Source: Malacoraja senta
Lineage: Eukaryota
Direction: 5' to 3'
Length of the DNA stretch: 64,000 nucleotides
Assembly: GCA_038087875.1 (NCBI GenBank)
Contig: CM075977.1
Location: forward strand, 135,904,001-135,968,000
Each line of letters starts with the position of its first letter. Position 1 is the stretch's first letter. Both the position numbers and the translations under genes were made by a program. A model generated the notes under the pieces. It was not told where the DNA came from and ran no database searches. It worked only from the letters and a program-made list of their open reading frames with translations. This document shows positions 1-53,945 of this stretch, piece after piece.

Positions 1-1421
1 TCTAGGCATGTATCAGGTGAGTTCTTTATCCAAGGGATGTGAATTCTTACTCCAAATGAAGGCCTACATAATTTGGACAGAAGATTAGATCACGGAAAAA
101 GGATCTGTCATACTGTTGTTGACTAATGTATTAAACTCGAGATACAATATCGGAAACTCCTGCTTCAGTTCTTTGTTGTTGCATGTTTAGTAGAATTGAT
201 AAGAATGAGAGAAGGTATTTATCCCGATTAGTCATTGTTTCTTGGAAATCTTTGATTCCACCATACAACATGCCTCTATCACCAAAAATGAGTCAATTCT
301 CCCAAATTGAAGTGCTAAGAAATAGAAGTACAGTGGGCCATTTGGCTCCTCAAGCTCCTATAACAGCTAAGAAAAATACTAATTTCTCTCTTGAATAACC
401 TCAACAAATGTTCCATCAGTCCTACAGCAGACTAACCAATCTGATGCAAATAGAGAAAATTATATATTGTTTGTGTTCGCCCTCTCTAATAGCTCTCATT
501 TCACAGCTTTCCCTTGTTCATGTTCTCCCTTTTTAACAGCCTCATTTCATTTGATTAATTTACCTATATCTTATCCTAGTGACAATTACGGCCATGTCTA
601 TCAGGCCCATTCCCTTTCAGTTCCTTCTCCAAACTCTGCAACTGACAAATAACTTGATTTCTTTCTTTCCCAGGTCTGATGAGGTTTTTCAAACTGTAAC
701 ATCTCTATTTCAATTGCCACAGATGCTGCTTGATGTGCCAACGTTTTCCAGCATTTTCTGTTTTTATTTCTGATTTTCAGCATCTACAGGTTTTGATTTT
801 CACTTTGTATATTTCATTGTTTTACTGTCCACGATGAAAGGATGATATTGATTAGTTTATATATCTTTGAACCTTCTTCAAGGTTAATGCACTATGAAGT
901 CCTCAATATTTGTTTATAAAAAAAGACTGCAATAAAATTAATAAGTGCAATGTTCTGGTGCAATTCATCAATATTTTTCCCGTTTACAAAATGCAATCTA
1001 ATAAATATGTGGTATTATATTAAGGTAAGATTTCAAAGCTCTTACTTGGCTGGCTAATACAGAAGCTGGGAATTAATTAAAATTCAGATGCTGGAAATCT
1101 GAAATAGAAATAAAGTGCTTCCAATAATCAGTCAGGAAGAATCTGTGGAGGAGGAGCAAAGTTAATGTTTCAAGTCAGGTTAGTTTTGTAATTAGTTATC
1201 ACACTGATTTACCAAATTCTTTTCTGAACATTATCTAATGTTGTGAAAGAAAGTGCAATATAGGTTTAAAATGCATGCAACATTTCCAGCTTTGGTCATT
1301 ATATTAAAAAAGAGCTAGTTTTAATAGCTATTGATTTATACTGAATTTTAATGTGTAACATAGCAGTTTGGTCATATGTAATGGTTACATTTTGTTCTCT
1401 TTACTGTCTGGTTTCCTTCAG

Positions 1422-1462
1422 GATATGTGAAGCTGTGCCATTCCAGTCACAAAAGAATACAA
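1422..1462 (+). CDS. JTB: JTB-family gene, internal coding exon (equivalent to human exon 2; end of signal peptide region)
   Basis: ttccttcag|GATATG...TACAA|gtaagt; 41 nt, reads (R)ICEAVPFQSQKNT(T), similar to human JTB LCQAEAPVQEEK; its phase joins the next exon. Coding exon 1 was not identified in the window. Confidence 0.7.
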
Positions 1463-2738
1463 GTAAGTGCTGTAATAGTAAAGTAACAAGTTGTCTCAAC
1501 ATTTTACATTTTTTGAAATATGAAAAAAAATGTAAAGAATGGAAATGGGCAACAATGAAAACAAATTTAGATTACTGGAAGACAATTTACAAGATTTGGA
1601 CTGCAGAAGTTTAACGTTGAAAGCTCTATGGGAAGGCTGTGCTGGAATACAAAAGCAAGTCTGAAGAAGGGTCTCGACCTGAAACTTCGCCCATTCCTTC
1701 TATCCAGAGATGCTGCCTGTCTCGCTGAGTACCTCCAACATTTTCTGTCTTAACTTCAGCAAGAATATCAAGTCGATTTTCCTATTGGAAGATTGTATGA
1801 TCTAAATGACCAAAATAAGTTAAAACAAGAGAAAGGAACAATGTGAAAGGCGAAGGCAGTGTAACCTAAACCATTAATTTATAGTGGGAACATGAATACG
1901 AATTTCAAGAATTAACTTACTATTTTAATCTTGCACCATGTAAGTTACTTTGTGCAATCTTGGTGTGTGTCATCTTCCATTAGGCTTAACACCATATAAC
2001 CAAATTAAACATTTTCACTTTAAAGTTATGCAGCACAAAATATTCTTGAACTTGAGCAGCTCCTGAGGAAAAACATGAATTGATTTTTTTTTTTCCAGTG
2101 TTACTTGGAGCCAGTTTATAGATTTTATGGAGTTCAATTTCTCCCCTACCATCACCATTAATCATGTTTCCCTTATTTTGTCCCAGCCTCCATCTTCATA
2201 GATTTAGTACCTGTCATGTATAGATTCTCCAAAAATTGAGTGTCTGACCTACGTACAACCTGTGCATACGAATCAGTGTTTGGGAAATCAGCGGGATAGA
2301 TTAGCCAGCAGCAACAGGACTGCAGGCATCTTCTTCCATGTGAGAATTCCGTTAGCGGCAATTTCTGAATGATTAAGTTAAATGCCATGGTTTAACTACA
2401 CACCACCCGCAGTTAGTGTGCATTTTTATTAAACTATATTGGCAGGTGACGAGATTCTGATTTGTGAACTGTTCTAGTTTCGAACATTTCTCGGGAACAG
2501 AATCCTACCGTAACCCGGGAAGGAAATGTATTGGTAATTCTTGAATTGATTTTCTGTGAAAGATGGCTGTTGATTCACGAGTTATATTGTTATATTGCCT
2601 CAAAGGTAACCTTTCTAGACTTTGCTGTGTGGCGTGGGATTCTTATGTAGAAATAGATTTGCTATTTTTTTTTTTTTATGTTACTATTTTCACTTGCAAA
2701 GTAAGATTATAAATATATTTTATTTATAAATTAAACAG

Positions 2739-2824
2739 CAATTATTTTGCACCCAAGACCTTGCTGGGAAATTGAAGAATACAGCATTGTAAGAGAATGT
2801 AGTCCTTGCACTGATTACGAAAAG
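2739..2824 (+). CDS. JTB: JTB-family gene, coding exon (Cys-rich ectodomain, part 1)
   Basis: aaacag|CAATT...GAAAAG|gtattt; 86 nt; IILHPRPCWEIEEYSIVRECSPCTDYEK matches JTB PCWxxEEFxVxxECSPC. Confidence 0.9.
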
Positions 2825-2938
2825 GTATTTTGCATGTGTGTATGTGTGAGATATTCAAATATTTTTGTCCTTTAAGAGATTAGTGTGATTATAATTTTTC
2901 TTTGAGAGAATATTCTAACTTTACATCTTAGATCAGAT

Positions 2939-3137
2939 GTGTAAGAAGGAACTGCAGATGCTGGTTTAAACCGAAGATAGATACAAAAAGCTGGAGTAAC
3001 TCAGCGGGACAGGCAGCATCTCTGGAGAGAAGGAATGGGTGACTTTTCGGGTCGAGAAGAGTCTCAACCAGAAACATCACCCATTCCTTCTCTCCAGAGA
3101 TGCTGCCTGTCCCACTGAGTTACTCCAGCTTTTTGTG
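2939..3137. mobile_element. Fold-back insertion made of two inverted Penelope-type terminal repeats
   Basis: Arms about 2979-3057 and 3062-3140 are near reverse complements; flanked by the direct repeat TCTTAGATCAGAT (2926-2938, 3138-3150). Confidence 0.75.
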
Positions 3138-3875
3138 TCTTAGATCAGATATTGTATCATGGTGACATACACCTTTAAAATTGTTAGTAATGACACATTA
3201 TACGAGTAGATACATTGTAAAAAAACAACAGTATCTCTAATCATTATTGGCTAATAAATAATGGTGAAGCTAATAACTTAGTATTTATGCTATAGCTGTT
3301 ATTATTTATGATAAAATGCTACATCAACTTGATATGAGGATCAAATTGCTTGGTTAAATTTGTTGAACCATTTCTGTCATGTTGCTGTCATCACCCTGAA
3401 AATTATATCTGATTTTTTTTTTTTGTCGCCTTATCATTCAGATTGCTCTTTCCTTTTTATTTTTCCTCACTTAATTTACCATTGAGTTAACATTAAAATG
3501 TTATATTTCCTTCTTGGTTCTTATTTCCCTGCCCAATCAGCATAACTTAAAACAAAACCACTGTCTGCCAAATAGCAGAAATTAATTGATTATGGGATCT
3601 TGCTGTGCATCATTTTTCTGCTATGTTTTCTATAGTGCAGAGGACACTAACTTTAAAAGTTGCTTAATTCGTTATAAAGTATTTTTTGGCATAAAGAGAT
3701 CATGAAAGCTATGATATGAATGGATATTCAGATATTTTAAACAGCAGTAGATCTAAAATTTATCCGGTCTCTTCAGTGTCTAGAAGACCTCAGAATAACA
3801 TGTATTGGTAAAATGAAAAGTGGATTAAAATATCTGAATAAAGATGAATGTGGAGAAAGATTACTTCCTTTAAAT

Positions 3876-3946
3876 GTAACCCTTACAGCTAAAAATATTG
3901 TACACAATACGCAAGTAACCCTTACAGCTAAAAATATTGTACACAA
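3876..3946. repeat. Local duplication of a 32-bp unit
   Basis: GTAACCCTTACAGCTAAAAATATTGTACACAA at 3876-3907 and 3915-3946. Confidence 0.9.
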
Positions 3947-4595
3947 AGTCTTGTATTTCCTGAAAGTAGAAATACTACTTGTAGTGACATGCATTGAATT
4001 GTAGCATTTTGCATTCAACATTCTAATACCAATCAGAAGGTAAAGATTTTGATTGCCTATTAACATTTTAGTGTTTTTTTGGATCAGATCCTTTCATGTT
4101 CTGCTCTATTGCTCAGGTCTGAGTTCTATGGAAGGGTCCCTGTTCCAAAATATCATATTTTATTTTTCCGCAGGTGCTGCTTGACCGTCTGATTTCTTCC
4201 ATTTCTATTTTTGTTTTGGATTTCAGTCTCTGCAATTGTATTTGTTTTTTGTCCTTTTGTTTTTGGTTATACAAAGGAAATATAGAAATAGCAGAAAAAA
4301 ATGTCACGTTGGATAAAGTACCAAAATTTACTTTTACTTATTTCATATTGAAAAGATTATGATCCATCCTTATGAATGCTGATTAAACTAAATAATCAAT
4401 TTAGAAACTGTTTTAAATGAGCAAATATACGATTTACAAATGTGTTACAAATTTGCCAGGTGTTCAAGAAACCATATTCTAAGTAAAAAGAAATCCAATT
4501 TCTGGCCTAGTTTTGTTGAGTTTTACCATGTCATATACTTTGTCTTTAAAATCTCATTGCTATAATTCCATAACATATCATCTCACTTTCCGCAG

Positions 4596-4669
4596 ACCGT
4601 GCATATAGAATGTAAATTTACTGGATTTGTTGAAGATGTAAAATGTACGAAAGACCACAGGTTCAGAAG
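4596..4669 (+). CDS. JTB: JTB-family gene, coding exon (Cys-rich ectodomain, part 2)
   Basis: ttccgcag|ACCGTG...AGAAG|gtaagg; 74 nt; TVHIECKFTGFVEDVKCTKDHRFR(S) matches JTB ECxxTGYVExxxC. Confidence 0.9.
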
Positions 4670-7600
4670 GTAAGGCAACTGCAGATATCTGTTCAGTTCG
4701 TATCCTTGTTTGTAAGGAATCATAGGTTTTTGAAATCAGTAAATTTCATTTTATTCTCATTAGATTCCAATACAAGATCAGAAATAGTAATATCTGTATA
4801 TTTTACGTATTCATTGGGCAGATTTTTTTTGGGAGCCACATGAGCTCTTGTTATTCACCAATTGGGCTTCACTCTTGTTGCTTGCAAAAGAGTAATGAAG
4901 TAAATTAACCACATTTACCTTGTTGCTTAACATCACAATTAACAATTAACACAACACTTGCTGTTTTCTGATTTGATGCCAAGCTTCAATTTCTTTATTG
5001 CTAATTGTCATGTTTGATATTTCAGCAGAGATTACATTCATTTTGTAATCATACAAGCACTGATGCTTAATTTTAAGTTTGCTCTTACTGTTGACATCCT
5101 TGCTATATATTATGTAGCTGTGGCAAATTATGTTATCCAGTTGCCAATTGCTACAAATAATCTTCCTTGGGTGGGTGTCATTCGCATGCTTTTCTTGCAG
5201 CAGTATTTCAGCTACCACTTAATAATTGGTCATGAATGCAAACGTGGCAGGAACAGAAGTTCTGTTGGGCTTGGAGCTATGATCCCTGCTTTTCAATGTG
5301 ATGCTATTGACCAAGATAAACAAACTGAAAGCTTATTTATATAGAATGCCAAAAGAATTGATGCTATTGGAGCTTTTGTGGCAATAACGCGTTTATAGAG
5401 CACTTTTAGTTTGGTGCTTTAGAGGTATAACAGAATGGATCTTAAACCAGAGTAGGATTTGAAAGGAGATGACCTTGGCTCAGATATGAATTGACATAAT
5501 AACGGAGGTGAGTTGGGATTGAAAGCTCGTTTTGATTAGGGCACTGAGGTTGTGATTATACAAATAATTACTATTTTGTCTTTCATCCTATTTCATTTTT
5601 AATCATACGTGGCCCTTGATGATTAAATTTGATAATTGCATGTCATCTAAATCTGCCAAATGATGTCCTTTCTGCACTCTTTCTCACTCCAAACGTATCT
5701 TTTTGTAGGCATTTTATGTAACTTTTGTAACTATAGAGTGTGTAACAGGATATTTGCTCAAACTGCCAGTTTTTGTGAACCACTGCCTATCTATTTCTAT
5801 TCCTAGCCTTTTCCCTTTTAGATACATCTATTCCATTTGTTATAATTGTGGTAGCATATTTCACATCCTTATCACACACTGGGCAAAGAAACCGCTTCTG
5901 TATCTGATTCACAAGTGACTATCTTTATGGTGCCAACTTTTGGATTTATTCACAGGTGGCAATATCTATTCTACTGAAACTCGCCGTAATTTTAAGTATG
6001 GTGTATTTAATTGATATTTCTGATTCTTGGCCTCAATGTTACAAAAATAGATTATGAATATCAGATTATGTTGCAGTTGGTGTGAGTATGTTGTACAAAT
6101 TAGCTGCCTATTATAAAAACACTACAATAACTTTGGGATTTCTCATGGCTGGGAAGGGCACTACTCAAATGCAAGCCGATCTAAACATTATATAAACAAA
6201 CCTGAAGATTTTTTTCTTTGCTGATGAGAAACTTCCTTGAGCTATCTGTTTGTAGCCTTAGCTGTACATAACTGGTTATGAAAAACTGATGCAAATAAAG
6301 TGGTGGTGGGAGTGGTGTAGCGGGAGATTGTAGCAATTTATTAACTCGATTAGCCACTCGTAACTTAATTTAACAATTTTCTATTTGATGATTAGAATAA
6401 ACGCATCAAATTTGCTGTTGCACTAAATCATCACTATCCTGGAAGAATAGGGTCATAAAGATTACTATGGAGAACAAAAATTGCAGACACCCTAAGACCA
6501 CTGGGCAATGACACCAAGACTGCAATGAAATACATTGATCAAACTATCTACAGATAAAACAATTCCTGTACATGTTTCACATTTCAGCTTGGTTTGCTTT
6601 TAATCGAAGGTAGACACAAAATGCTGGAGTAACTCAGCGGGACAGGCAGCATCTCTAGAGAGAAGGAATGGGTGACGTTTTTGGTCAAGCCCCTTCAGAC
6701 TGCTTTTAGTTGACTGCAGTCTTACAGAGAAGAAATTGATGTGATTTCCGCCATCCATCAAACATAGAATTTTCAACACAACCACACATGTACCAGATCC
6801 TTTCTTGGGCTGTAAATCTACCATGCTCCCGACACACCTGGTCCACATTGCAGGTCCTAATTCCATCTGCACATCTAATCTATACTTTGGACCCTGGTTC
6901 TGGCTATACATCAATACAATTGTTACTTTAACTGGTGATTACAGGACTTGGAAAGTCACATTATATAGAAATAATGTATAAACTATATTTACTTTTACAT
7001 ATTTGTGAATAGATATGGGAGCAAACAAAATAATTGACCCAGGTTCCTTACCCCAGCCACACACTGACTATTGATATTTGACTACTTGCCATTGTGTTGA
7101 ATGCATAGTGTACAGGATTCATTGGACACCATAGGAGAGGGCCCTGAGAATTAGTCAATGTTAGCAATTTCCCCAGATGTTTGTGGGGAGGAATTTAAGG
7201 TTGATTGCCTTTGCCATGTCTGAATTGGCTGCCTAGATTGAAAGCACATCCAATGTTATTCATTCACTATTTAAATGAAGTGGTAATGGTACAACTGGGT
7301 GAGCTTGCTTGGCTACTCACTTGCCAACCACATGAGTCTGGAATCGCATGAAGGCCAGATCTGGTTAATGTACCAGTTTTCCTTCCCTTGATGTGTAATG
7401 AACCAGGTGGGTTTTTAATGACAATTCAGTAGTTTTCACGTGCAAACTATTTGGGGTTTTGTTCCAAATTCCAGTTTATTTATGAATCTAAATTCCATGG
7501 CTGTTTTGGTGGGATATGAACTGGGGTTTCTCGATTACCAATCACATAACAACCTTTGCATTATGACATTATCCATCACATGCACTTGTTTATCTGATGC

Positions 7601-7919
7601 TGTACAGTAAAGGTAAATTATGAACTTCAGTGAAATATTCTGACCTTCCACTCTGCTGAAAGGGCAGTCCTCAGCAGACACTTTACCTTTGTACCCCTGA
7701 GCTTGCACCACCTCAGCAGGTTCAGGGCCCATCATGATGCTAAACTCTTCTTTTGTCACCTCCACGTCTCTACCTATTTCTTTGGCAGCCAGTCCACACC
7801 TCCCACTGAAAATCCTTTTGCTTGCCTCTAAGATACCCCGTTCAGGCCTTTTCACCTCTTGATATTTTGTAATTTCCAATTGCCACCGCAATATCTCCTG
7901 CCTTAATTTCTCCACTCAC

Positions 7920-10150
7920 CTTGCCAATCTAACCTTAACCCCTCCCCATTTGTACAGATCTCTTCACGTAATCGCAAACTCGTCATGAAACCCGCAGACA
8001 AGAGTGGTGCCATTGTAGTCTGGCAGACTGACATCTACCTTCCAGAGTTTAGACAGCAACTCTCGGACATCCATTCATACCTACCCCAGGACCATGATGC
8101 CAACAACAAACACCAGACCACTATTTCCTTCACTCATATAGATCATCTCAGGCGATCTCTTCTACAAAGCATCCAACTTGATCATGCTCCAACCCCATAC
8201 TTCTGGCTTCTATTGTATACCCAAAATCTACAAACAGGACTGCCTTTAGAGGCCTGTTTTTACTGCCTGCTCTTGTTCCACTGAAATTACTTCCTCATAT
8301 CTTGATTCTATCCAGTCTCCCCTTACCCAGTCCTTTTTCGTCAACATTCAGGATACCATGCATGTCAACCATTTTGACAAATCCCATTCCGAGGCCCCCA
8401 CCACCTCATCTTCACCATGCATATACACCTCCATATTCTTTCTACAACAATGATCTAACCAGTTCCTTTCCACCAACATACCTGGTTGAACTTGTTTTAT
8501 CCTGAACAGCTTTTCTTTTGAGTCCTCTTGCTTCCTACAAATCAAAGATGTAGACATAGGAACTAGCATGAGTCCCAGCTACAATCATCTTTTCATTAGC
8601 TACGTGGAACCATCCTTCTCTGGTATCACTCCCCCACTCTATTACATCGACGACGACATTGATGCTACTTGATGTACTCACTAGAATTTAGAAGATTGAG
8701 GGGGGATCTTATAGAAACTTATAAAATTCTTAAGGGGTTGGACAGGCTAGATGCAGGAAGATTGTTCCCGATGTTGGGGAAGTCCAGGACAAGGGGTCAC
8801 AGTTTAAGGATAAGCGGGAAGTCTTTTAGGACCAAGATGAGAAAAACATTTTTCACGCAGAGAGTGGTGAATCTCTGGAATTCTCTGCCACAGAAGGTAG
8901 TTGAGGCCAGTTCATTGGCTATATTTAAGAGGGAGTTAGATGTAGCCCTTGTGGCTAAAGGGATCAGGGGGTATGGAGAGAAGGCAGGTACAGGATACTG
9001 AGTTGGATGATCAGCCATGATCATATTGAATGGCGGAAGGGCCGAATGGCCTACTCCTGCACCTATTTTCTATTTTTCTACTTCCTGCACCCATGCGGAA
9101 CCTTTGCTACTTTCACTGGGAAGCAGTGCTCAAATTCTCTTGGACCATCTCTGACACTTCTCTCTTTTCTGATTCTCCCTCCATCCATCCACTGACAATT
9201 ACAATAAACCCACTGACTTCCACAGTCACCCAGACTACACCTTTTCCACCCTATCACTTGAAATCCAACCCTTTCATCCAATGTTTCCGTCTCCATGACA
9301 TCTGCCTTGAAGAGGAGACCTTCCATTTCAGGACATCTAAAATGAGCTGTGGTTGATGGAGCCCTCTCGCACATTTCATTCATTTCTCAGATTTTTGTTC
9401 TTACCCAGCCTCCCTCCAAACAGAAGAGATCTCGTTCACCTCCCCCTCGCATTTCACGCTATTGAACCTCCACATGCATACATTTCTTCCTTCATTTCTG
9501 CTAGCCACATCTTCTCCACACCCCTTTCCACCTTCCACAAGGACTACTCTCTCTGAAACCCCCTAGTCCACCCATCCTTCCCCACCCACTCCCCCTGACA
9601 CATTCCTCTGCAAACACAGGAGGTGCCACACCTGCTCTTACACCTCATCCCTTACTACCATTCAGCCTCTTCAGGTGAGACACAGATTCACATGCACCTC
9701 CAACCTCATCTATTGCATCCTGTGCTGTCAACGCAGCCTCCTCTACATTGATGAGACAAAGTGCAGATGAGGCTCCCAATTCTCAGAACACCTCTCCTCG
9801 TTCTGGAATGGCCATCTTACCTTCCCAGTTGCATGTTATTCAAATTCCCATGTCAGCCTGTGTATTCTTGGCCTCCGTTGCCAGGGTAAGGCTCAATGCA
9901 AACTAGAGGGTTAATATCTCATTCTCCACCTGGGTTAGTCAACAGCATAATGATATGAACATTGAATTCTGCACTTTCAGATACTTTTCCTCCTCCTGTT
10001 TCCACCCCCCACTCCCTCATTCTCTTCCAATCATCCATTTTTATCCCCCTTCCACTCTTGGTTCCATCCACCTACTACACGCACATTACACCCACTGGAT
10101 CCCCGACCCAATCTGGCTCGATCTGCCCTTCACCACCTTCCCCTAAAGTT
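7920..10150 (+). mobile_element. Degraded Penelope-like retroelement (RT and GIY-YIG remnants), interrupted by CR1
   Basis: KPADKSGAIVVW at 7985 (PLE RT N-terminus); 9600-9980 resembles the GIY-YIG region of 62880-63257; many stops and frameshifts. Confidence 0.7.
8670..9078 (+). mobile_element. CR1-type LINE 3' fragment
   Basis: ORF YSLEFRRLRGDLIETYKIL...TRGHSL...FFTQRVVNLWNSLP, the typical CR1 ORF2 C-terminus, followed by a 3' UTR and (TTTC/TA) tail. Confidence 0.9.
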
Positions 10151-11331
10151 CCCATTATCACCTTCCTTACTTACCACATTCCAACACTGGCAGCCTTTGT
10201 GTTCCTGCTTATCACCCTCCAGCAGCTATCTCCACCTTCACTGACCCCTCAGCCCACCTATCTCCATCACCCAGAGAGTTGTGAATCTGTGGATTTCTCT
10301 GCCACAGAAGGCAATGGAGGCAAATTCACTGTATGATTTCAAGAGAGTTAGATTTAGGGAATCAAAGGATATGGCGAAAAAGCCAGAAAGGGGTATTGAT
10401 TTTGGATGATCAGCCATGATCATATTGAATGGTGGTGCTGGCTCGAAGGGCCAAAGGGCAGAATGGCCTTCTCCTGCACCTATTTTCTATGTTTCTATTC
10501 CTTTTTATTTTGCTTGTCTACTTCCACCTATCGCCCATCTGCCTCGGTCTTCCAACTCTGACCGCCCCCCCCCTACCCCCACACACAAACTTTCAGTCTG
10601 GCTTCAGCTGCTTGACATTCTTCACTCCTTCTCAAACCACCAATTACCCACTGGTGGGTAATTCAAACCTCTCCCCCTTTAGACTGGCTGACTTCCCTCT
10701 CAAATCAATCTTGAAGCAGGTTCTCGACCTGAAAGGCCGACAATTCCATAGATGTTGCTTGACCTACTGAGTTCCTCCAGCAGATTGTATTGTTGATCCA
10801 GATTAAAGCATCTGCAGTCTCATGTGTTTCCACCTATTGCACCCACCTGGCGCTACAGATTGATTCTGTCTTTGGCTTATCAGCACTTTCTGGGATCTAT
10901 ATCACTTTTTTTTCCAAAAGGTTCTTTGTGGTTAAACATGGAAATAATAGTAATATATCAAATGAATATATCTTAAGATTTATGGTTTCCTAGTATTTAA
11001 ACTTTGTTGCATACAAGCAGAAATAATCTAATCAGAAAGCAACCCCCCTCCCCTGCCCTCCTCACCGCCACCCAACCATCCTGCTGTTATTTAATAAGAT
11101 CATCACTGATCTGATTGTATCTTCTGTTGATCTGCTTGTGCCATCTACAGTGGAAGTACACAAATGTGCTACATTGTGGCCTGAAATACATTCTGTGTGG
11201 ATACTGTTTGATTTCTGTATCATTGCATATGTCATTAATCTAACAACTTTTTAATGTTGGATACATGGAATTTATTTAAAAAATATGAAACGTTTATTTT
11301 TGCTTATAGCTGTTTTCACTTTGCCCCATAG

Positions 11332-11488
11332 CTGTCGTTCAGTTGCAATGGAGGAAGTGAAATTCTGGAAGTTTGAAGGAATTGTTGTTTTGGTTGGTGT
11401 AATCTTTGCCATCATTGTTACTTACCGACAAAGAACCCTAGACAGGCATGCTGAACAAAAAGTGAGACGACAGCTTGAAGAGATTTAG
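11332..11488 (+). CDS. JTB: JTB-family gene, last coding exon (transmembrane helix and cytoplasmic tail)
   Basis: ccccatag|CTGTCGTTC; CRSVAMEEVKFWKFEGIVVLVGVIFAIIVTYRQRTLDRHAEQKVRRQLEEI* versus human CRSALMEQRLFWKFEG...RQRQLDRKALEKVRKQIESI; phase consistent with the upstream exon. Confidence 0.95.
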
Positions 11489-12010
11489 TTTTGCAACAGT
11501 TACTGACACTGCTTTTGAATCTACAGCAGTTCAGGTTTTTCAGTGTTTTATCCTTTTATATTCACCATCCACCCATTTATGTTGTAGGAAATATTATTCT
11601 GTCTTAAAATAGCTTTCAAGGCAGTCAAAAAGTTAGGATATAATTACTTTGTGTTTGACATTAAATGTGTATAATATTTATATGGAGAGGTAAATTGTAA
11701 TATAAAAATTCTATTTATGTAGACTATAAAATGGAAGAGAATAGTTTGGTACCTTATTTTATTAGATGTTAGGAAATTTGATTAAGAGTACTTTTCCATA
11801 TCTATAAAAGTATATTGGTACTGATTTCTGTACAACGTTCTTGTGCCAGTGTTATTTTTTGTACTTTGTACTGAATTTGCTTGTTTGTATTCCACCCCCA
11901 CCTGCCACTGTTCTCCCCTCCACTAACCTAACAGGAAAAAGTATTCTAATTATTGTATAAAATGCAAGATAAATTGTCACTTGGTTTGTTTGCAGATAAT
12001 ATTTTGAAGA

Positions 12011-12016
12011 AATAAA
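12011..12016 (+). terminator. Candidate polyadenylation signal of the JTB-like gene
   Basis: AATAAA about 520 nt after the stop codon, followed by a GT-rich tract (tgttgtgtttcgt). Confidence 0.55.
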
Positions 12017-12965
12017 GTACAACACCCAAGAACTGCCTGTTGTGTTTCGTCTAGGAATCTATTTGTCTTTAAATAAGTTTACTCTGCATTTTATATCTTG
12101 CCTGGGATCTTCAGATTCTCAACGGGCATGGCCAACCTGATTAAGTAGTCATCAATGTAAAACAATCCTGCTTCCCAGAGAGGTTTAACAGTGAGTTAAT
12201 GGCTAATGAAGAGTTTTGCTTTTCAAGATTTCCAGTGTAGAAAATACACGAACTGGGGTTCGAAAATGTATCTTTTATTTTCACAGTTATGCAAATTGAA
12301 TGCAATTGTATTTTTTCCTCAACATAAAGTGCTTTTAAATGTGCACAAAAATAAAGGTGAAGGCAATAGTTGAGGAATTGAGTTTTGGCTTTTCATTGCT
12401 TTAAAAGTTGGGGTTGTTAAACGTTTCTCCCAATACAGGTTGTCCCACATGGTCTACCAGAGTAATCATTTCTAGTCTCATACCCCTACCTATTTCCCTG
12501 TAACTTATTCTGTCCTGTGCCTTTCAATTCCTATGATCCTCCTGCCATCCATCCACATAGGACAATTTATATTGGCTAATTAATTTATCAATACAACTTT
12601 GGGATGTGGAGAGGAAACGGAAGCATGCATAAATATAACAAATTGAAAGAACCAGACAAAGACTCAAGTGGAAAGCATCTTTGAAATACTGAATAGTTAG
12701 GAAGGAGGAGGGGTTTTTTCGTGGCAAGAAGGCAAGATGTTGAGAGCAGGGGGAGTGAATTAGTATTGTTGGGGAAGGAAGAATTAATTGGAACAAATCA
12801 AACAACCCCTCTGGAAGATACTTTTAGTGGCAGTGTGGTGGTGGTATTGCATATTGTTGATCAATAGACGAGGATTTTAGAGCAAAAGTGAGAAGGATCA
12901 CATGCTGGTTCAAGGAGTGAGGAGAAAGAATATTAAGGCATAAGTGTACTTAATAGAACAGACAA

Positions 12966-13339: not shown

Positions 13340-14625
13340 ATAGCTGCACAGCACAGAAACAAGCTTTATACCCCAACTCATCCATGGTGACCAAGTTACC
13401 TTTCCAAGCTAATCCCACTTGTCTGTCTAGCCCATGCCCTGCCACACTTTTCCTATCTGTGTGCCTGTCTCTATGTCGTTGTCACTTGCGGGCAGAGCAC
13501 CAAGGCAAATTCCTTGTATGTGAATACTTGGCCAATAAACTTATTCATTCATTCATTCAAAGTATTTTTTTAAATATTGCAATTGTCCCTGCTTCTACCA
13601 TTTTATCTGGCAGTTTGTTGCATTTAGGCACCCGCCTCTGTGGAAAAGATTGTTCCTCTGATGCTTTTTAACTATTTTTCCCCCTTTCCTTAAAGCTATG
13701 CCCATGAGTTTTAGAATTCCCTTCCCTGGGGAGAAGACTGGCTGTTCATCTTTTCGATGCCCCTCATGATTTTATAAACCTCTAAGGTCACCCCTCAGCT
13801 TTCAAGGCTCTAGTTGAAAGAAGACCCAGTCTTTTCTTACTTAAACCTTCCAGACCCAGTAACATTCTTGTAACACTTTCTTGCACCCTTTCTAGTTTAA
13901 TGGCATTCTTCTTCGCAAGACAACCAAACCCTTCCTAGACTGTCTATTACTGGCCTTGCTTTGTTCTGGCCTTTTTATTACCTCCAGTTCCCTCCCCCCT
14001 ACTTTCAGCCTGAAGAGGGGTCCAGACCCAAAATGTCACCCATCCTTTTTCTCCAGAAATGCTGCCTGACCTGTTGAGTTACTCCAGCACTTTTTGTCTT
14101 TTCTCCTGTATTCAATACCTTGATAGATGAAGGCATGTATGCAAACATCTATACCACACTGTCCATCTGTGCCGCCACGTTCATGGAAAAATGTACTGGT
14201 TACTGAAGGTCTCTCTGTTCTACAACACTCCCCAGGGGCCAACCATTTGCTGTGTAGATTCTGCCTAGGTTGGCCCGACCAAACTGCAACACCTCATATT
14301 TATCTGAATTAAACACCATCAGCCATTCCTTGGCCCAGATGGGGCAGGATCCTTCTTCAATGTCCACCAAACCATCAACTTTAGCATCATCTGCAAACGT
14401 ACTAACCATGCCATCTGCATTCACATACAAATCGTTAATATAAATAACAAACAATAGTGGACCCAACACCAATCCTTGTGGGACTCCACTCATTACAAGT
14501 CTAGCCTAGACCAACCCTAAACCACCACTACCATCTGTTTCCTATCTTCAATTTAATTTTATATCCAATTACCTAGTTCTCCCTGTATCCCATCTGATCT
14601 AACCGTTCAGACCAACCTACAAATG
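13340..14625 (-). mobile_element. CR1 LINE fragments
   Basis: ORF 14200-14493 SGVPQGLVLGPLLFVIYINDL...FADDAK (RT); CR1 3' sequence toward 13340; interrupted by a Penelope terminal repeat at about 14000-14100. Confidence 0.8.
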
Positions 14626-15314
14626 TGACAGGCTGCGAAACCAGGAAGTCATCAGGTAGTAGCGGCAATCTGTGCTTGCAATTGATACAACTGACTAACA
14701 TGGACCCTGAAATGGAGATACAATGCATCAAATGAAGTTTTTTTTTAAAGTAAACCAAGATCAATTAATAAGCATAAACTAAAATCCAGATCTACCTCTA
14801 TCAGGGCAACACTGTTGCTTTATTATCTGTCATTTTAAAGTTTTTAAATCCTTGGATTTATTCCAAATAAGTGTTCTGATATTGATAGTATTGAATTACA
14901 ATGTGAATTCTGTTGTCGTTCACCGATTGATCTTGTGCCATGAGTTTTTTTTGTATGAAATGAGATTTACTTTTTCAGATTATAATTGCAACACTTTAAC
15001 AAGCTTAACAGTGACTGCTCAATTACTGCTGATGTATTTTAATACATTTGCAAGGGTGAAATTAAGATTCACAAGAACTAATTTATTCCTTTAGCCACTA
15101 AATTATGTTAGCATTTAATACAATTAAGAAAAATTGGCAATTGCTTGATGTCAATTGCTTTTTTTAATCCCATTCATGAATATGTATAAACCTATCTTTG
15201 ATCCTTGAGAGGAAAATTACTTTTGACTTCAGATACTGAACATGAAAAATATTAGATATATAAGAATAATTCAAATAACTTTACTTCATAAATTAAGAAA
15301 TTCTGTTTTCCTAC

Positions 15315-15437
15315 CTAAAGTTCCAAACTGAGTGTCAAGTCCCATGGTAATAATCAGCATGACGAAAAACAAAATGGACCATAGAGATGCCCATTGCAAT
15401 TGTGCAAGAGGCTCTGGGTAGGCAATGAAAGCAAAAC
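15315..15437 (-). pseudogene. Isolated exon of an SLC6 (neurotransmitter/amino-acid transporter) gene, most like SLC6A14
   Basis: ccctgtttag|GTTTT...ACTTTAG|gtagga, 123 nt, phase 1-1; [41 protein letters not shown] matches the SLC6 EL4-TM8 motif; no other SLC6 exons recognised. Confidence 0.75.
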
Positions 15438-15751
15438 CTAAACAGGGTACAATGGAAATGGTACTGAAATTGTGATTCAATAAGGCTTTAAAAAATACCT
15501 GTTGTAACCAGATGGTATTTGCCCAATAAAAAGTATCTGACAAAATCAATCATCAATATATATTTCATTTGTTCAATGTAAATCACTGCTTCTACATTTT
15601 TACAACAAAATTCTGATGATTCTGCACTTCAGGGCTTTGATGGTGCTGAACAGATTTTCAATGCTATTGGCCATTTGTTATTCACTGCCACGACCCACTT
15701 TAATCACTTATTTCATCTGATTTTTTTTTTCCCGCAAAGGCAGGTGTTTTA

Positions 15752-17789: not shown

Positions 17790-18520
17790 TCAGTTCAGTT
17801 TATTGTCATGTGTACCGAGGTACAATGTAAAGCTTTTTGTTGCGTGCTAACCAGTCAGCAGAAAGACAATACATGTTTACAATCGATCCATTTACAGTGT
17901 ATAGATACATGATAAGGGAATAACGTTTAGTGCAAGGTAAAGCCAGCAAAGTCTGATCAAGGATAGTTTGAGGGTCACCAAATAGGTAGATAGTCGTTCA
18001 GCACTGCTCTCTGGTTGTGGTAGGATGATTCAGTTGCCTGTTAACAGCTTGGAAGAAACTGCCCCTGAATCTGGAGGTGTGTGTTTTCACACTTCAAGAC
18101 TGTTTGCCTGATGGGAGAGGGGAGCAGGGAGTGGCCAGGGTGTGACTCGTCCTTGATTATGCTGCTGTCCTTGCCGATGCAGCATGAGGTATAAATGGAG
18201 TCAATAGAAGGGAGGTTGGTTTGTGTGATGGTTTGGGCTGCATCCACAATTTGCTGCGATTTATTGCGGTCTTGGATGGAGCAGTTCCCAAACCAAGCTA
18301 TGATACATCCTGATAAAATGCTTTCTATGGTGCATCTGTAGAAGTTAGTGAGACTTGTAGGGGACGTGCCAAACTTCCTCAACCTTCTAAGGAAGTAGAG
18401 GCATTGGTGTGCTTTCTTGGTCGTTACTTCAATATGGGCGGTCCAGGATATGTTGTTGATGATATTTACTCCAAGGAGTTTGATGTTTTCAACCATCTCT
18501 ACTTCAGCACCGACAATCAT
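17790..18520 (-). mobile_element. Rex1/Babar LINE 3' fragment
   Basis: [17 protein letters not shown]...FYRCTIESILSGCIIAWFGN, homologous to the element at 32740-35930; ACAATAAACTGAAC tail. Confidence 0.85.
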
Positions 18521-20599: not shown

Positions 20600-23400
20600 C
20601 TCACTGATGTATTACAATGAAGAGATCAGACATTCTGCGCAACCTGTTTCCAACCGCATCGTTTTTTTTGTTTTGGATTTCGAGCATCCATTGTGCCGTG
20701 CTTTTGTGGAAATAAATAAACTATTTGCTAGTGGGGGATATTTTAACCCGCCTAATCGATGGCGTTTAAACAAGACGAAGAAAAAAACAAATTTATATTC
20801 GCCGAACAAAATAAATAGATTGAAAAATCCCGGACACATTTTTTGGGATCAATTGAACTAACCTATCAAACTTTCTATCCCCAGCGAAAGTTATCTCTTG
20901 CCTCATCATCCTGCAGGGAGAAGAGCGGTGTTTAATATCTGCAGCGTTTAAACGCCTCAGCACCAACGAATTTGCGGAGTAAAATCGAACAAGCAGTTTC
21001 TCGTGTTATGCCTTCGCTGTCCCACAAATAATATTCATTCAGAAGAAAACAAAACTGCTCCGAGACATTCCTCACCGAATTTTCCCACATCTAACTCCTA
21101 ACTTTCGATGGATGCACTTTTATTCAGTTTATTTTGAAACGGAGGGAAAAAATACTAACAGGCGATTTGCAGTTTAAAAAAAAAACCCTTTCAAACTTTG
21201 CGACCTCTGGTAGTGTCGGGAGGAGTTCTTCAGTCTCGCGGTACAATTGGGCCCTTTGCGGTCACGTTGTGGAGCTCCAACGCGAAAGCGAGGAGCCATT
21301 TTAACAGTGGATTTATCAGTGGATGCGGGGACGAGGCGCGGGCACAGACTGGGAGGAAGAAGCAGGTGCTGCTTATATTTCTCGTTGCTTTGATTTCCCT
21401 CCCTCGAAAGAACTTTATGATTCTCCCCGCGGTTGTGGATATTTAGCTTTATCTCTCTCTTTTTTCCCCCTCCCCGAGGAAGAGTTGAGGGAATTCCATG
21501 GCGATGGCCACTCCCAAGAGCCAGCAGCGGACGAGCGGCAGACGCGCGGCCGCCACTCCGCTCAGCCCGACCCGCATCTCCCGGCTGCAGGAAAAGGAGG
21601 AACTGAGCAACCTCAATGACCGGCTGGCCGTCTACATCGACAAGGTGCGCTCGCTGGAGACGGAGAACAGCACCCTGCAGTTGCGGATCTCCGAGAAGGA
21701 CGAGGTGACCAGCCGGGAGCTGAGCGGTATCAGGAGCCTGTACGAGAATGAGCTGGCGGACGCCCGCAAATCCCTGGATGAGACGGCCAAGGATCGCGCC
21801 CGGCTGCAGATCGAACTGGGAAAGCTCCGCGGCGACCACGATAGCCTGTTACAAAAGTAAGTGCCGGCGCCATTCACAACGCTGCCGGGTTTATTTTTTT
21901 AATTACAACTCACAATTTATAGGCGATAAAAACGTAAACGTAAAAACGTGCCTGGTTTCAGACCTGACGCCATCGCGCGTCCAGTTTGCAAGGTGAGCTA
22001 AGCGCGAAAATATTTCGGGAAACACAGTGATTACATTGAAATGAGAACATTAGAAATTGTTCTCAAATTTGTGACCCACGACGGGGTTAAATTGCTTACA
22101 AGTTGACCGAGGCCTTCTAAAAACAACCTTAAATATGGCAGATATTTGAATAGCTTACTTTGCAAGAAAACGGGGATAATCGAGTCATACTTGTAGGTTT
22201 GATTTACTTACATTTTACTCGCTCGCATTAACAAGTTCAACAGTAACAATTTCTGGCCGCAGTCCAAGCTCTCCTTGAGATTAAATGTATCATTAAAGGT
22301 GGGAACTTGTGATTTGAATTCGTGACACTGGCTGCCCGTGGGGCTTGAACTGTTAATTAAGGCTGACCTCGGTGACTTGATCACGATGGCATATCCTTAC
22401 GTCAGAATCCTTGTTTTTGCTTAAATCTTGTTGTACTTAATTGGCAAGGATTAAATGGATCCATTTGGCAGTTATATTGCTGCACAAAGCTGCCTGTACG
22501 CGGGCTAAAGGCGGGCATCGCTCTCGAGTTCTGGGTGAGGGCGGGAAAGAACATCTGAAATCTTAGCCCTTTCTACAAACGTCTCGCCTTTCTGCGAGCT
22601 GTAAATTTCCGCTCCTCTTGAGCGATGAAAGGGAGTGAAATCTGCAATAAATGTGCCCGGGAAACTGGAGGGAATCTGGGGTGGACAATGGCCATCTGTC
22701 GCGTGGTAGCGGCCGCCGTGCAGACAAAGAGCCGCTGTGCAATTAGCCGGGTCTCTGCAAAACACCAGACAAGCCTAATTCAGGCGATGCTGCTCGTTAT
22801 CATTCAACCCAAGTTAGTGGGAACGTCTCTGAAATATTCTGAATAACGATAGTGTTGCACGCAGGGTTACCATGTAAGGCACGAGAAGAGACTCTGCAGA
22901 TGCTGGGGGTTTTAAAAACAAAAATAAACAAATACTGGAGGAACTTTATCTGATTAAGGGTCTCGAACCGAAACGTATCCTATCCATGTTCTCCAGTTAT
23001 GCTGCCTGACTCGCCGAATTTGCCCCAGCACTTTGTGTTCATTTTTGCAGGAGGAGCTCGGCGGGTTAGGCAGCGTCCGTGGAGGGAAAAGGCGGTTCGG
23101 GTCGGAACGCTTATTCGGACTGATTGAGGGTCCCGATCCCGAACGTCGTATGTTCATTTCCAGGCGATAAAATCGTGCCTGGTTTCACTGGTTTCAGACC
23201 TGACGCCATCGCGCGTCCAGTTTGCAAGGTGAGCTCAGATTTTCGCTGAGTTCCGCCAATAGTTTATTTTGTGTTCGGTTTACCATGTGTAAATCTTCCT
23301 CTTTGCTGTACTCTGGCGGTCAGGGCAACTATAAGAGCCATTAAACAGCATTTAAAGTTCTGACAACTAAGCAGCTGTTTGTGTGGTTTGCCGTGTTTGC
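20600..23400 (+). promoter_or_regulatory. CpG island: LMNB1 promoter, 5' UTR, exon 1 and proximal intron 1
   Basis: Sharp rise in CpG and GC content around the lamin start; includes CHR-like TTTGAA/TTCAAA (about 21134 and 21190) and YY1-like GCCATTTT (about 21295). TSS not determinable. Confidence 0.7.
21498..21856 (+). CDS. LMNB1: Lamin B1 exon 1 (head and coil 1A/1B start)
   Basis: [38 protein letters not shown]; 359 nt, donor aa|gtaagt, same length as human exon 1 CDS. Confidence 0.97.
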
Positions 23401-41200: not shown

Positions 41201-41690
41201 GCCCTTATCAGGGCAGGCGGCGGGAGGAGGAGGCGGTGGAGCCGCTGTCGCGGCCACTGCTGCCGCTGTTTGGGGCCCGTCATTCGCTCCGACCCTTCCT
41301 CACCCCGCACCTAGTATCTTTGCCCCGCACAGCCGCCGCCGACACGAAATGTCGCGTTCCTATTCTCCAGAGATGCTGCCTGACCCGAGGAGTTACTCCA
41401 GTTTTTTGTGTCTATCTTCGGTACAAACCAGTATCTGGTTGCCAAGCCGGGCAAAATGACTCGGTGTTTAGGTTGCCCGGCGGCGCTTTGAGTGGTCAGT
41501 GGCACCCGGGCAACCGCTAATTTCGAGCCCTGTTAATGGTGGGGAATTGGTTGTGTCTTTGTTCGAGAAAGAAGTGGAGGGTCCCAAGACTTTACTGTGT
41601 ATGGAACTGTATGGAGACTGGATGCCCATGGTAAAGATGTGATGGCTGGGACCTGGAAATTGGAATTTATCAAACTGGTCTAGGCTCCAG
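38290..41690 (-). mobile_element. Degraded Penelope-like element, split by the 39242-41532 insertion
   Basis: KLKEQHLTLYLGSIQANGMNIEYS at 38563-38784; RT-like sequence continues on both sides of the insertion. Confidence 0.6.
39242..41532. mobile_element. 2.3-kb non-autonomous hAT-like element, copy 1
   Basis: Ends CAGGGCTC...GAGCCCTG; TSD TTAATG (39236-39241, 41533-41538); highly similar to 48146-50366. Confidence 0.85.
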
Positions 41691-46600: not shown

Positions 46601-46868
46601 GGTTCAAGGATCTGACTAGTAGAACAGAAAAAGCCTCAAATCCGTTTTATTGGCAAGGGGGAACAAAAACAATACTTGTCTTGGTATGCGCGGGGTCTAG
46701 TTTTCGGCAACATACCTCTCTTTCTGCCTCCATCTGCAGCGCTGATCATGACTCAGCCCGTCGGTGAACCCCTCTTGTACATGAACACATCAGATGTATT
46801 GGCAAGAGAAAAAACAAAAAGAATACTTGTCTTGGTATGCGCGGGTTCCGTTTTACAGCAGCACACCC

Positions 46869-47052
46869 CTCTCTCTCTCTCTCTCACTGTCTGTGTCTGT
46901 CTGTCTGTGTCTGTCTCTGTCTGTCTCTCTCTGTCTGTCTGTCTTGCTCTGTCTGTCTCGCTCTGTCTGTCTCGCTCTGTCTGTCTCGCTCTGTCTGTCT
47001 CGCTCTGTCTTTCTCGCTCTGTCTGTCTCGCTCTCTCTGTCTCTCTCTCTGT
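46869..47052. repeat. Compound (CT/CTGT/CTCGCT) microsatellite
   Basis: Direct inspection. Confidence 0.9.
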
Positions 47053-47749
47053 CCCTTACTCAAAGCGCTATCAGCCGCAGACTGGCGCGTAAAGCAATAC
47101 ACACAGCGCTGCCGGTTTGGCGCGCAAAGGTTTAAACTGGGTGCTGTCGGCTTAGTGCGTGGGAATTTAAACAAAGAGCTGTTGGCTGCAGCGCTATGGG
47201 TTCTAAATATAGCGCTACCACCCACAGCGCTATGGGGTTTAAACACAGCGCTATGGGTCGCAGACTTTACAGGCAAAATTCTCATATAACAAATGAGTAT
47301 TGTGTTTAGTTTTGATCACCCGGAATAGGAAAGATGATGTTAAGCTGGAAGGGGTGCAAAGAAGATTTTCGATAAAGTTGCCCGGACTTGAGGGCCTGAG
47401 CTATATGGAGAAATGGTGCAGACTTGGAATTTCCCCCTTGGAGTACAGGAGAATGTGGGGTGATCTTATAAAGGTGTATAAGATCATGAGAGTTACAGGC
47501 TAACTGCACAGAATCTCTTAACCAGAGTAGGAGAATCAAGAATCAATGGATAGGGGAGGGATTTAATAAGAACCTGAGGGGCAACATTTTTACACAAAGG
47601 GTGGTGTGTATATGGAATGAGCTGCCAGAGGATGTAGTTGAGACAGGCACTATCGCAACATTGAGAAAAAAAAACATTTTGACAGGTATATGGGTAGGAT
47701 GGGTTTGGAAGCATATGGGCCAAGTGTAGGCAGGTGGGTTTCGTGTAGA

Positions 47750-52983: not shown

Positions 52984-53183
52984 NNNNNNNNNNNNNNNNN
53001 NNNNNNNNNNNNNNNNNNNNNNNNNNNNNNNNNNNNNNNNNNNNNNNNNNNNNNNNNNNNNNNNNNNNNNNNNNNNNNNNNNNNNNNNNNNNNNNNNNNN
53101 NNNNNNNNNNNNNNNNNNNNNNNNNNNNNNNNNNNNNNNNNNNNNNNNNNNNNNNNNNNNNNNNNNNNNNNNNNNNNNNNNNN
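52984..53183. other. Assembly gap (200 N), probably hiding LMNB1 exons 5 and 6
   Basis: Run of N; coil-2 exons (LENARL..., ...AYRKLLEGEEER) are absent between exons 4 and 7. Confidence 0.9.
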
Positions 53184-53840: not shown

Positions 53841-53945
53841 GATCAACATATGGGTGGCTGGGAACTGATCCGAAAAATTGGTGATGGAGTTGTCTCCTAC
53901 AAGTTTACCACTAAGTATGTGTTGAAGGCTGGACAAACGACTACT
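53841..53945 (+). CDS. LMNB1: Lamin B1 exon 8
   Basis: aaacag|GATCAA...ACTACT|gtaagt; 105 nt; [35 protein letters not shown]. Confidence 0.97.

What the first reader, a model, noticed from the sequence alone, without database searches (positions are those of the whole stretch)
1422..11488. JTB-family gene directly upstream of LMNB1: possible second vertebrate JTB paralogue (retained ohnolog)
Seen: four phase-compatible exons with clean GT-AG sites encode a JTB-like protein with all six ectodomain cysteines, the FWKFEG motif, a TM helix and the RQRxLDR tail, ending 10 kb before LMNB1. Known: human JTB is single-copy at 1q21 in the same region as LMNA, while human LMNB1 (5q23) neighbours PHAX/TEX43 and MARCHF3. 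Inference: this is the whole-genome-duplication sister of JTB on the LMNB1 paralogon, lost in mammals and kept here. The ectodomain is quite diverged from human JTB, which fits.
Basis: partly seen in the sequence, partly recalled or inferred. Interest (0 to 1): 0.75.

Follow-up and report, generated by a model that had tools for sequence, protein, structure and literature searches.

The report
Second JTB gene beside lamin B1
A skate gene lying 10 kb upstream of lamin B1 is an intact second copy of the small membrane protein JTB, from an ancient duplicate that sharks, rays, chimaeras, coelacanth, gars, sturgeon and reedfish keep and that was not found in tetrapods or teleosts.

Summary
Four GT-AG exons (1422-1462, 2739-2824, 4596-4669, 11332-11488, + strand) join in frame into 118 residues. 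They match Pfam JTB at 111.5 bits against a cut-off of 22.1. The six ectodomain cysteines of human JTB (PDB 2KJX), the FWKFEG motif, the membrane helix and the RQRTLDR tail are all present. The signal-peptide exon lies about 2.6 kb upstream of the window start. The stop codon is 10.0 kb before exon 1 of a lamin whose Ig-fold exon scores 45.9 bits to human lamin B1, against 22.5 for B2 and 21 for A/C.

The protein falls in a "JTB-B" clade that also holds coelacanth and gar copies, and reedfish and sturgeon carry B-signature proteins. This clade is separate from canonical "JTB-A". Eleven species carry both copies. A duplication confined to cartilaginous fishes is rejected (p-AU 0.0004). The order JTB-B then lamin recurs in little skate, gar and sturgeon.

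Two points stay open. A whole-genome-duplication origin is inferred, not shown. JTB-A could not be looked for in this genome, and it was not found for the skates Leucoraja and Amblyraja.

RefSeq already labels these genes "JTB-like", but I found no paper on them. It is a solid but ordinary lineage-retained duplicate.

The parts
1422..1462 (+). JTB-B coding exon 2 (end of the signal peptide and start of the ectodomain; begins with the last base of a split codon)
   Evidence: AG acceptor and GTAAGT donor. Identical boundaries in L. erinacea at L004 18943-18983. RNA-contig depth is confined to this bin.
2739..2824 (+). JTB-B coding exon 3 (NTT sequon and the PCW...ECSPC cysteines)
   Evidence: AG/GT sites. 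RNA contigs of runs X1, X2 and X4 lie on 2739-2822, starting exactly at the acceptor (table 8). Conserved at L004 22906-22991.
4596..4669 (+). JTB-B coding exon 4 (second half of the cysteine-rich ectodomain)
   Evidence: AG/GT sites, phase 0 start. RNA depth only in bin 4601-4800. Conserved at L004 24736-24809.
11332..11488 (+). JTB-B last coding exon (CRS, FWKFEG, membrane helix, RQRTLDR tail, stop TAG)
   Evidence: AG acceptor, open frame to the TAG. 100% identical in protein to L. erinacea and to the Logan fragment P0011. The exon start before CRS is shared with JTB-A, lamprey and gar genes.
11489..12370 (+). Probable 3' untranslated region of JTB-B (tentative end)
   Evidence: AATAAA at 12011 and 12350. 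A 1434-base RNA contig of run X2 carries exon 3 at its positions 253-336, which leaves about 870 bases after the stop. This is an inference.
21498..21857 (+). Exon 1 of the downstream lamin gene (head and start of the rod)
   Evidence: ORF with ATG at 21498 and donor GTAAGT after 21857. Pfam Filament E=1e-26. 97% identical to the L. erinacea lamin exon at L004 38285-38647.
53841..53945 (+). Ig-fold (lamin tail domain) exon of the same lamin, which marks it as lamin B1
   Evidence: 45.9 bits to human lamin B1 chains (2KPW, 3UMN), against 22.5 to lamin B2 and about 21 to lamin A/C. Boundaries read.

Best explanation
Positions 1422-11488 hold exons 2-5 of an intact, expressed gene for a small type I membrane protein of the JTB family. 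The parts are a signal peptide (its exon lies just upstream of the window), a roughly 70-residue ectodomain with three disulfides, one membrane helix and a short basic cytoplasmic tail. The gene is the skate orthologue of an ancient second JTB lineage, here called JTB-B, which sits head-to-tail just upstream of lamin B1. JTB-B and canonical JTB-A (the human 1q21 gene) arose by a DNA-level duplication that kept all intron positions. The duplication happened after the split from amphioxus and tunicates and before the split of cartilaginous and bony vertebrates. The most likely cause is one of the early vertebrate genome duplications that also produced lamin A and lamin B1. JTB-B is kept in chimaera, sharks, rays, coelacanth, reedfish, sturgeon and gars, and was not found in tetrapods or teleosts. 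By inference from JTB-A, it acts as a membrane-anchored factor in cell-cycle progression, cytokinesis or mitochondrial function, and has probably divided that role or its expression domains with JTB-A.
For: Shown here. (1) Gene model with canonical splice sites and the JTB domain. (2) Six cysteines aligned to human 2KJX. (3) Exon identity of 98.3% against about 92% in introns versus L. erinacea, with 3 synonymous and 3 non-synonymous changes. (4) RNA contigs restricted to exons, and 1.2-1.4 kb Logan contigs that encode the full spliced protein of a gene spanning 21 kb. (5) B clade of 14 rows at SH-aLRT 96 in the 148-row tree. In the careful tree B has 64/87 and A has 77/93. (6) Monophyly of chondrichthyan A+B rejected, p-AU 0.0004. 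(7) Both genes annotated in 11 species, on different chromosomes. (8) B-type in Acipenser and Erpetoichthys. (9) Order SPMIP10, JTB-B, lamin in little skate and gar, and JTB-B then lamin in sturgeon. (10) JTB-A lies just downstream of a bZIP gene in gar and sawfish. (11) Intron positions are shared by A, B and lamprey. (12) The lamin is B1-like. From the literature: JTB is a membrane protein implicated in cell-cycle progression, spindle formation, cytokinesis and mitochondrial membrane potential (PMC10572688).
Against: Backbone support is only moderate because the alignment has 155 columns. The cyclostome genes go with B in the quick tree and with A in the careful tree. Amphioxus and lamprey JTB have no lamin within 10 kb, so adjacency before the duplication is not shown. 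The paralogy of human 1q21-22 and 5q23 is taken from memory, not tested here. No functional or tissue-expression data exist for JTB-B. JTB-A was not found for skates, so this genome may hold only one JTB.
Confidence: 0.85

Rival explanations
1. JTB-B arose by a small-scale (segmental) duplication in the vertebrate or jawed-vertebrate stem rather than by whole-genome duplication. Its position beside lamin B1 would then be coincidental or due to a later move.
For: The trees only date the split to between the invertebrate chordates and crown jawed vertebrates. No lamin lies next to JTB in amphioxus or lamprey. No genome-wide paralogon test was run.
Against: Both copies are linked to lamin paralogues. 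JTB-B is adjacent to lamin B1 in four species. Human JTB and LMNA share 1q21-22 (established map knowledge, from memory). Lamprey JTB lies next to a Glrx-like gene, and the only human gene of that family I recall is C5orf63, beside MARCHF3 and LMNB1.
Confidence: 0.2
2. This is the single JTB orthologue of the genome, merely relocated next to LMNB1 (a simple translocation).
For: No A-type JTB was retrieved for Leucoraja or Amblyraja, and RefSeq names their B-type gene plainly 'protein JTB'.
Against: The protein groups with B-type genes of species that also hold an A-type gene, not with tetrapod JTB. It is 43% identical to the sawfish A copy and 83% to the sawfish B copy. The LMNB1 adjacency is shared with gar and sturgeon.
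Confidence: 0.03
3. The exons are a decaying, unexpressed relic (pseudogene).
For: Exon 1 is not visible in the window. RNA evidence comes from contigs of a closely related organism, not demonstrably from this species.
Against: The frame is open and all splice sites are intact. Exons are far better conserved than introns. Spliced transcripts exist in close relatives. Chondrichthyan B branches in the tree are short.
Confidence: 0.03

Closest known systems
Human JTB / PAR (jumping translocation breakpoint protein, 1q21; ectodomain structure PDB 2KJX)
   Same: Same Pfam family and same layout: signal peptide, six-cysteine ectodomain, FWKFEG, one membrane helix, RQRxLDR tail. Same intron positions.
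   Different: Only 46% identical. The tail reads RHAEQKVRRQLEEI instead of RKALEKVRKQIESI. There is a two-residue deletion in the loop before SCRS. The chromosomal neighbourhood is different: lamin B1 and TEX43-like, rather than the bZIP neighbour seen beside JTB-A. It is a paralogue, not the orthologue.
RefSeq/UniProt 'protein JTB-like' entries (Lepisosteus oculatus XP_015221506.1 / W5MPS6; Callorhinchus V9LA04; Latimeria XP_006002776.1; Pristis XP_051876395.1; Leucoraja XP_055489067.1; Amblyraja XP_032873432.1)
   Same: Orthologues of the window gene. It is 97% identical to the two skates, 83% to sawfish, 65% to elephant shark, 51% to coelacanth and 45% to spotted gar. The position upstream of a lamin is the same where it could be seen.
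   Different: These are automatic annotations with inconsistent names ('JTB' in some species, 'JTB-like' in others). None is described as a separate ancient lineage in any paper I could find.
nanos1A/nanos1B and similar early-vertebrate duplicates kept in cartilaginous fishes and basal bony fishes
   Same: Same phyletic pattern. Two copies occur in chondrichthyans and in basally placed sarcopterygians and actinopterygians (abstract of PMC5932020).
   Different: Unrelated gene family. It serves only as a precedent showing the pattern is common.

Membership tests
JTB family (Pfam PF05439) | Domain match above the curated gathering score | tested here: met
   111.5 bits against a cut-off of 22.1, E=2.9e-32, covering profile positions 6-110 of 110.
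JTB family (Pfam PF05439) | Six conserved ectodomain cysteines (three disulfides in the solved human ectodomain) | tested here: met
   All six align with 2KJX and with A-type, B-type, lamprey and amphioxus proteins.
JTB family (Pfam PF05439) | FWKFEG motif, one hydrophobic membrane helix, basic RQRxLDR cytoplasmic tail | tested here: met
   Read directly in exon 5 and in the alignment. Topology itself is inferred.
JTB family (Pfam PF05439) | N-terminal signal peptide | not testable with these tools
   Exon 1 lies outside the window. In L. erinacea a 25-residue hydrophobic first exon sits at L004 14993-15067, about 2.6 kb upstream of the point matching window base 1.
JTB family (Pfam PF05439) | Shared exon-intron structure | tested here: met
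   The ends of exons 1 and 3 and the start of the last exon fall at homologous residues in A and B genes, and the last-exon start also in the lamprey gene.
JTB-B lineage (LMNB1-linked paralogue) | Groups with B-type genes and apart from JTB-A | tested here: met
   SH-aLRT 96 for the 14-row B clade. 64/87 in the careful tree. Chondrichthyan A+B clade rejected, p-AU 0.0004.
JTB-B lineage (LMNB1-linked paralogue) | Lies directly upstream of lamin B1 on the same strand | tested here: met
   Window: stop at 11488, lamin ATG at 21498, Ig-fold exon B1-like. Same order in little skate, gar and sturgeon.
JTB-B lineage (LMNB1-linked paralogue) | Coexists with a JTB-A gene in the same genome | tested here: inconclusive
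   Met in 11 other species. This genome could not be searched. No A-type was found for Leucoraja or Amblyraja.
Early-vertebrate whole-genome-duplication pair (ohnologues) | Duplication dated between invertebrate chordates and crown jawed vertebrates | tested here: met
   Amphioxus and tunicates fall outside. A and B each hold both cartilaginous and bony fishes. Backbone support is moderate.
Early-vertebrate whole-genome-duplication pair (ohnologues) | Both copies lie in chromosome blocks descended from one ancestral linkage group | not tested
   Only local evidence is available: B lies beside lamin B1 (this work), and human JTB and LMNA both lie on 1q21-22 (from memory). No macro-synteny computation was possible.

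The most novel reading that the evidence does not exclude
The head-to-tail pair JTB then lamin may be an ancestral unit that predates the vertebrate genome duplications. It would have been kept adjacent for over 400 million years in slowly evolving fishes because the two genes share regulation, both acting at mitosis (JTB in spindle and cytokinesis, lamin B1 in nuclear-envelope dynamics). A related possibility is that skates have lost JTB-A altogether. Their only JTB would then not be the orthologue of human JTB, a case of reciprocal loss or hidden paralogy.
Probability: 0.12. Interest if true: 0.55.

Novelty: new member of a known kind. Interest (0 to 1): 0.35.

Why it matters
JTB is treated as a single-copy vertebrate gene and is studied almost only in human cancer cells. 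Jawed vertebrates began with two JTB genes, and mammals kept only the one linked to lamin A. That corrects orthology assignments: "protein JTB" of skates, catshark and stingray in RefSeq is the paralogue, not the human orthologue. It adds a marker to the lamin A / lamin B1 paralogous regions. It also offers natural systems (gar, skate, catshark) in which the ancestral JTB function may be split between two genes. The phyletic pattern is nonetheless a common one, so the finding is useful housekeeping for comparative genomics rather than a surprise.

Tried and rejected
1. I searched bases 1-1421 for an ATG exon with a fitting donor phase. None of the candidates resembles the signal peptide of relatives, and collinearity with L. 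erinacea places exon 1 upstream of the window.

2. Read laying on 1-6000 was swamped by two abundant SINE copies at about 1620-1760 and 2940-3140. The joint table showed only repeat artefacts, so splice junctions were not listed. Only exon-limited depth and the contig pieces on exon 3 could be used. The RNA contigs differ by 2 of 84 bases, so they probably come from a related skate.

3. The look-up of encoding contigs gave no DNA for basking shark (file too large) and no record for the coelacanth B protein. Ten-kb flanks are too short for most shark genomes.

4. Amphioxus and lamprey neighbours showed no lamin.

5. A search for a CaaX-ending exon on the + strand of 21-64 kb found none that looks like a lamin. 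The lamin gene probably runs past the window end.

6. Lamin exon 1 cannot separate B1 from the other lamins in the PDB, because only lamin A fragments cover that part. The Ig-fold exon was used instead.

7. The bZIP neighbour of JTB-A could not be identified further from ORFs. Calling it CREB3L4-like is a guess from human gene order.

8. Seven literature searches found no description of a JTB paralogue. Most hits for 'jtb' are journal abbreviations.

9. Zebrafish and Gouania 'JTB' representatives matched only the N-terminal half of the profile and sat on long branches, so they were left out of the careful tree.
Full report
**What is in the sequence**

On the + strand there are four exons at 1422-1462, 2739-2824, 4596-4669 and 11332-11488. 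Each is preceded by a pyrimidine-rich tract and AG, and the first three are followed by GT. The first exon starts with the last base of a split codon, and the junction phases (1, 0, 2) fit. The joined frame gives 118 residues ending in TAG at 11486-11488.

Pfam JTB (PF05439) matches at 111.5 bits against a cut-off of 22.1, over nearly the whole model. The solved human JTB ectodomain (2KJX) aligns with all six cysteines in place. Exon 5 reads CRS...FWKFEG, then a 16-residue hydrophobic stretch, then RQRTLDR and a basic tail.

**Missing first exon**

Relatives start with a 25-residue hydrophobic exon ending in ...SFR. No such exon is present in bases 1-1421. The window is collinear with the Leucoraja erinacea locus L004 at about 92% nucleotide identity. 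Window base 215 corresponds to L004 base 17781, and the skate's signal-peptide exon is at L004 14993-15067. Exon 1 therefore lies about 2.6 kb upstream of the window.

**Is the gene alive?**

- Against L. erinacea the 357 coding bases differ at 6 positions (3 synonymous, 3 non-synonymous), while the surrounding introns are about 92-94% identical. All eight splice sites are conserved.
- The protein is 97% identical to the annotated JTB of both L. erinacea and Amblyraja radiata. The window therefore comes from a third, closely related skate.
- RNA-library contigs of a coded organism A give depth only in the bins holding exons 2, 3 and 4, apart from SINE copies.
- Pieces of three such contigs lie on 2739-2822, starting exactly at the predicted acceptor.
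- Logan contigs of 1.2-1.4 kb encode the complete 143-residue protein of a gene that spans 21 kb in L. erinacea, so they must be spliced mRNA.
- Direct junction reads from this species itself were not obtained.

**The neighbour**

An ORF at 21498-21857 starts with ATG, ends at a GTAAGT donor and matches Pfam Filament. A later exon at 53841-53945 belongs to the lamin Ig-fold. It scores 45.9 bits against human lamin B1 chains, 22.5 against lamin B2 and about 21 against lamin A/C. The gene is lamin B1, and its ATG is 10.0 kb after the JTB stop, on the same strand. No CaaX exon was found before base 64000, so the lamin probably continues beyond the window.

**One JTB or two?**

Searches with the window protein and with profiles found two kinds of JTB in many fishes.

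The first kind, called JTB-B here, is the window's kind.
- It occurs in elephant shark, at least nine sharks and rays, both annotated skates, coelacanth (P0025), alligator and spotted gar (P0077, P0360), Chinese sturgeon (P0176) and reedfish (P0217).
- No other protein among the 382 retrieved carries its diagnostic motifs (ELKFWKFE, RAEQKV-type tail), and none of those that do comes from a tetrapod or a teleost.

The second kind, JTB-A, includes human JTB, all tetrapods and teleosts found, lungfish, coelacanth (P0056), gar (P0275), bowfin, reedfish, paddlefish and twelve cartilaginous fishes.

Both kinds are annotated, on different chromosomes, in Cetorhinus, Heptranchias, Mustelus, Chiloscyllium, Narcine, Pristis, Mobula, Callorhinchus, Latimeria, Atractosteus and Lepisosteus.

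**Trees**

- In a 148-row quick tree the B clade (chondrichthyans plus coelacanth plus gar) has SH-aLRT 96 and the A clade 88. Amphioxus and tunicate genes, named, lie outside both.
- In a 49-row careful tree rooted on amphioxus and tunicates, B is one clade (64/87) and A is one clade (77/93).
- Forcing all chondrichthyan A and B genes together costs 36.5 log-likelihood units and is rejected (p-AU 0.0004).
- The alignment has only 155 columns, so backbone support is moderate.
- Lamprey and hagfish move between the two trees: sister to B, sister to A.
- Intron positions are the same in A, B and lamprey genes, so the duplication was of genomic DNA, not a retrocopy.

**Synteny**

- JTB-B is followed by a lamin on the same strand in L. 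erinacea (7 kb), alligator gar (6 kb) and Chinese sturgeon (3.4 kb).
- It is preceded by an SPMIP10-like (TEX43) gene in skate and gar. From memory, TEX43 is the human neighbour of LMNB1.
- JTB-A sits just downstream of a bZIP gene in both gar and sawfish. In basking shark and sawfish it is followed by a PSP94-like gene, on chromosomes of 8-9 Mb. From memory, human JTB is flanked by the bZIP gene CREB3L4.
- Lamprey JTB lies beside a Glrx-like gene. From memory, the one human gene of that family, C5orf63, lies next to MARCHF3 and LMNB1. This hints that the lamprey gene sits in a B-type region.
- Amphioxus JTB has no informative neighbour within 10 kb.

**Interpretation**

Three things are shown. 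The window holds the skate orthologue of a distinct JTB lineage. That lineage is older than the split of cartilaginous and bony vertebrates. It is stably linked to lamin B1.

Origin by whole-genome duplication is inferred from three points: the timing, the DNA-level nature of the duplication, and the linkage of each copy to a lamin paralogue (JTB and LMNA on human 1q21-22, from memory). I put about 0.65 on genome duplication and 0.2 on a small-scale duplication.

Function is inferred only by homology. JTB-A is reported to be a membrane protein affecting cell-cycle progression, spindle formation, cytokinesis and mitochondrial membrane potential (PMC10572688). In bony fishes the B branches are three to six times longer than the A branches of the same species. 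In cartilaginous fishes both are short. This fits relaxed constraint before the losses in teleosts and tetrapods.

**Open point**

No A-type JTB was retrieved for Leucoraja or Amblyraja, although other batoids have one. JTB-A lies on small chromosomes that are often poorly assembled, so this may be an assembly gap. It could also be a real loss in skates. It could not be tested for this genome.

**Novelty**

The genes are already in RefSeq and UniProt as 'JTB-like', or inconsistently as 'JTB'. No paper describing a second vertebrate JTB lineage or its link to LMNB1 was found. The same retention pattern is documented for other families, for example nanos1A/1B (PMC5932020). The finding is correct and tidy but of moderate interest.

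Noticed in passing
window 1620-1760, 2940-3140 and 6600-6700: Copies of one short interspersed element sharing the core '...GGAGTAACTCAGCGGGACAGGCAGCATCTC...'. RNA-library contigs pile onto them at summed depths of 10^3-10^5 and produce many false 'joints'. This is an abundant, transcribed elasmobranch SINE that swamps read-laying in this region.
   Followed up: partly
window 7600-10700 (JTB-B intron 4) and 33100-35600, 18041-18520, 14200-14493: Transposon debris. A long C-rich block fills most of the 6.7-kb last intron of JTB-B. Reverse-transcriptase-like ORFs occur further on, for example 34646-35599 (+, 317 aa) and fragments on the minus strand.
   Followed up: no
window 15286-15549 (-): An 87-residue ORF between JTB-B and lamin B1 overlaps the stretch at 15315-15437 that another first-stage note (s1-187695) called an orphan SLC6A14-like transporter exon. 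Not examined here.
   Followed up: no
window 40000-41500 and 48900-50700: Two GC-rich blocks in the lamin B1 gene between exon 1 (21498-21857) and the rod exon near 51.7 kb carry near-identical ORFs (for example those starting at 40088 and 48983, and at 40466 and 49367 on the minus strand). A large element is duplicated about 9 kb apart.
   Followed up: no
window 46700-47300: Low-complexity CT-rich microsatellite-like tract that reads as long serine/leucine/cysteine ORFs in several frames.
   Followed up: no
window 52984-53183: A 200-base run of N (assembly gap or mask) inside a lamin B1 intron, just upstream of the Ig-fold exon.
   Followed up: no
L001 2155-6025 (-), alligator gar: A 503-residue La-domain gene sits between the TEX43-like gene and JTB-B in gar. 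I do not recall such a gene in the human TEX43-LMNB1 interval, so it may be another duplicate lost in mammals.
   Followed up: no
Leucoraja erinacea and Amblyraja radiata protein sets: Neither annotated skate yielded a canonical JTB-A protein, although sawfish, manta, stingray and electric ray have one. Either skates lost JTB-A or the small chromosome carrying it is missing from the assemblies.
   Followed up: partly
L003 16139-17165 (-), sea lamprey: Lamprey JTB is flanked by a Glrx-like (PF05768) gene and an EMP24/TMED gene. If the Glrx-like gene is the C5orf63 orthologue, the lamprey JTB lies in a region of the lamin B1 type even though its tail sequence looks A-like.
   Followed up: no
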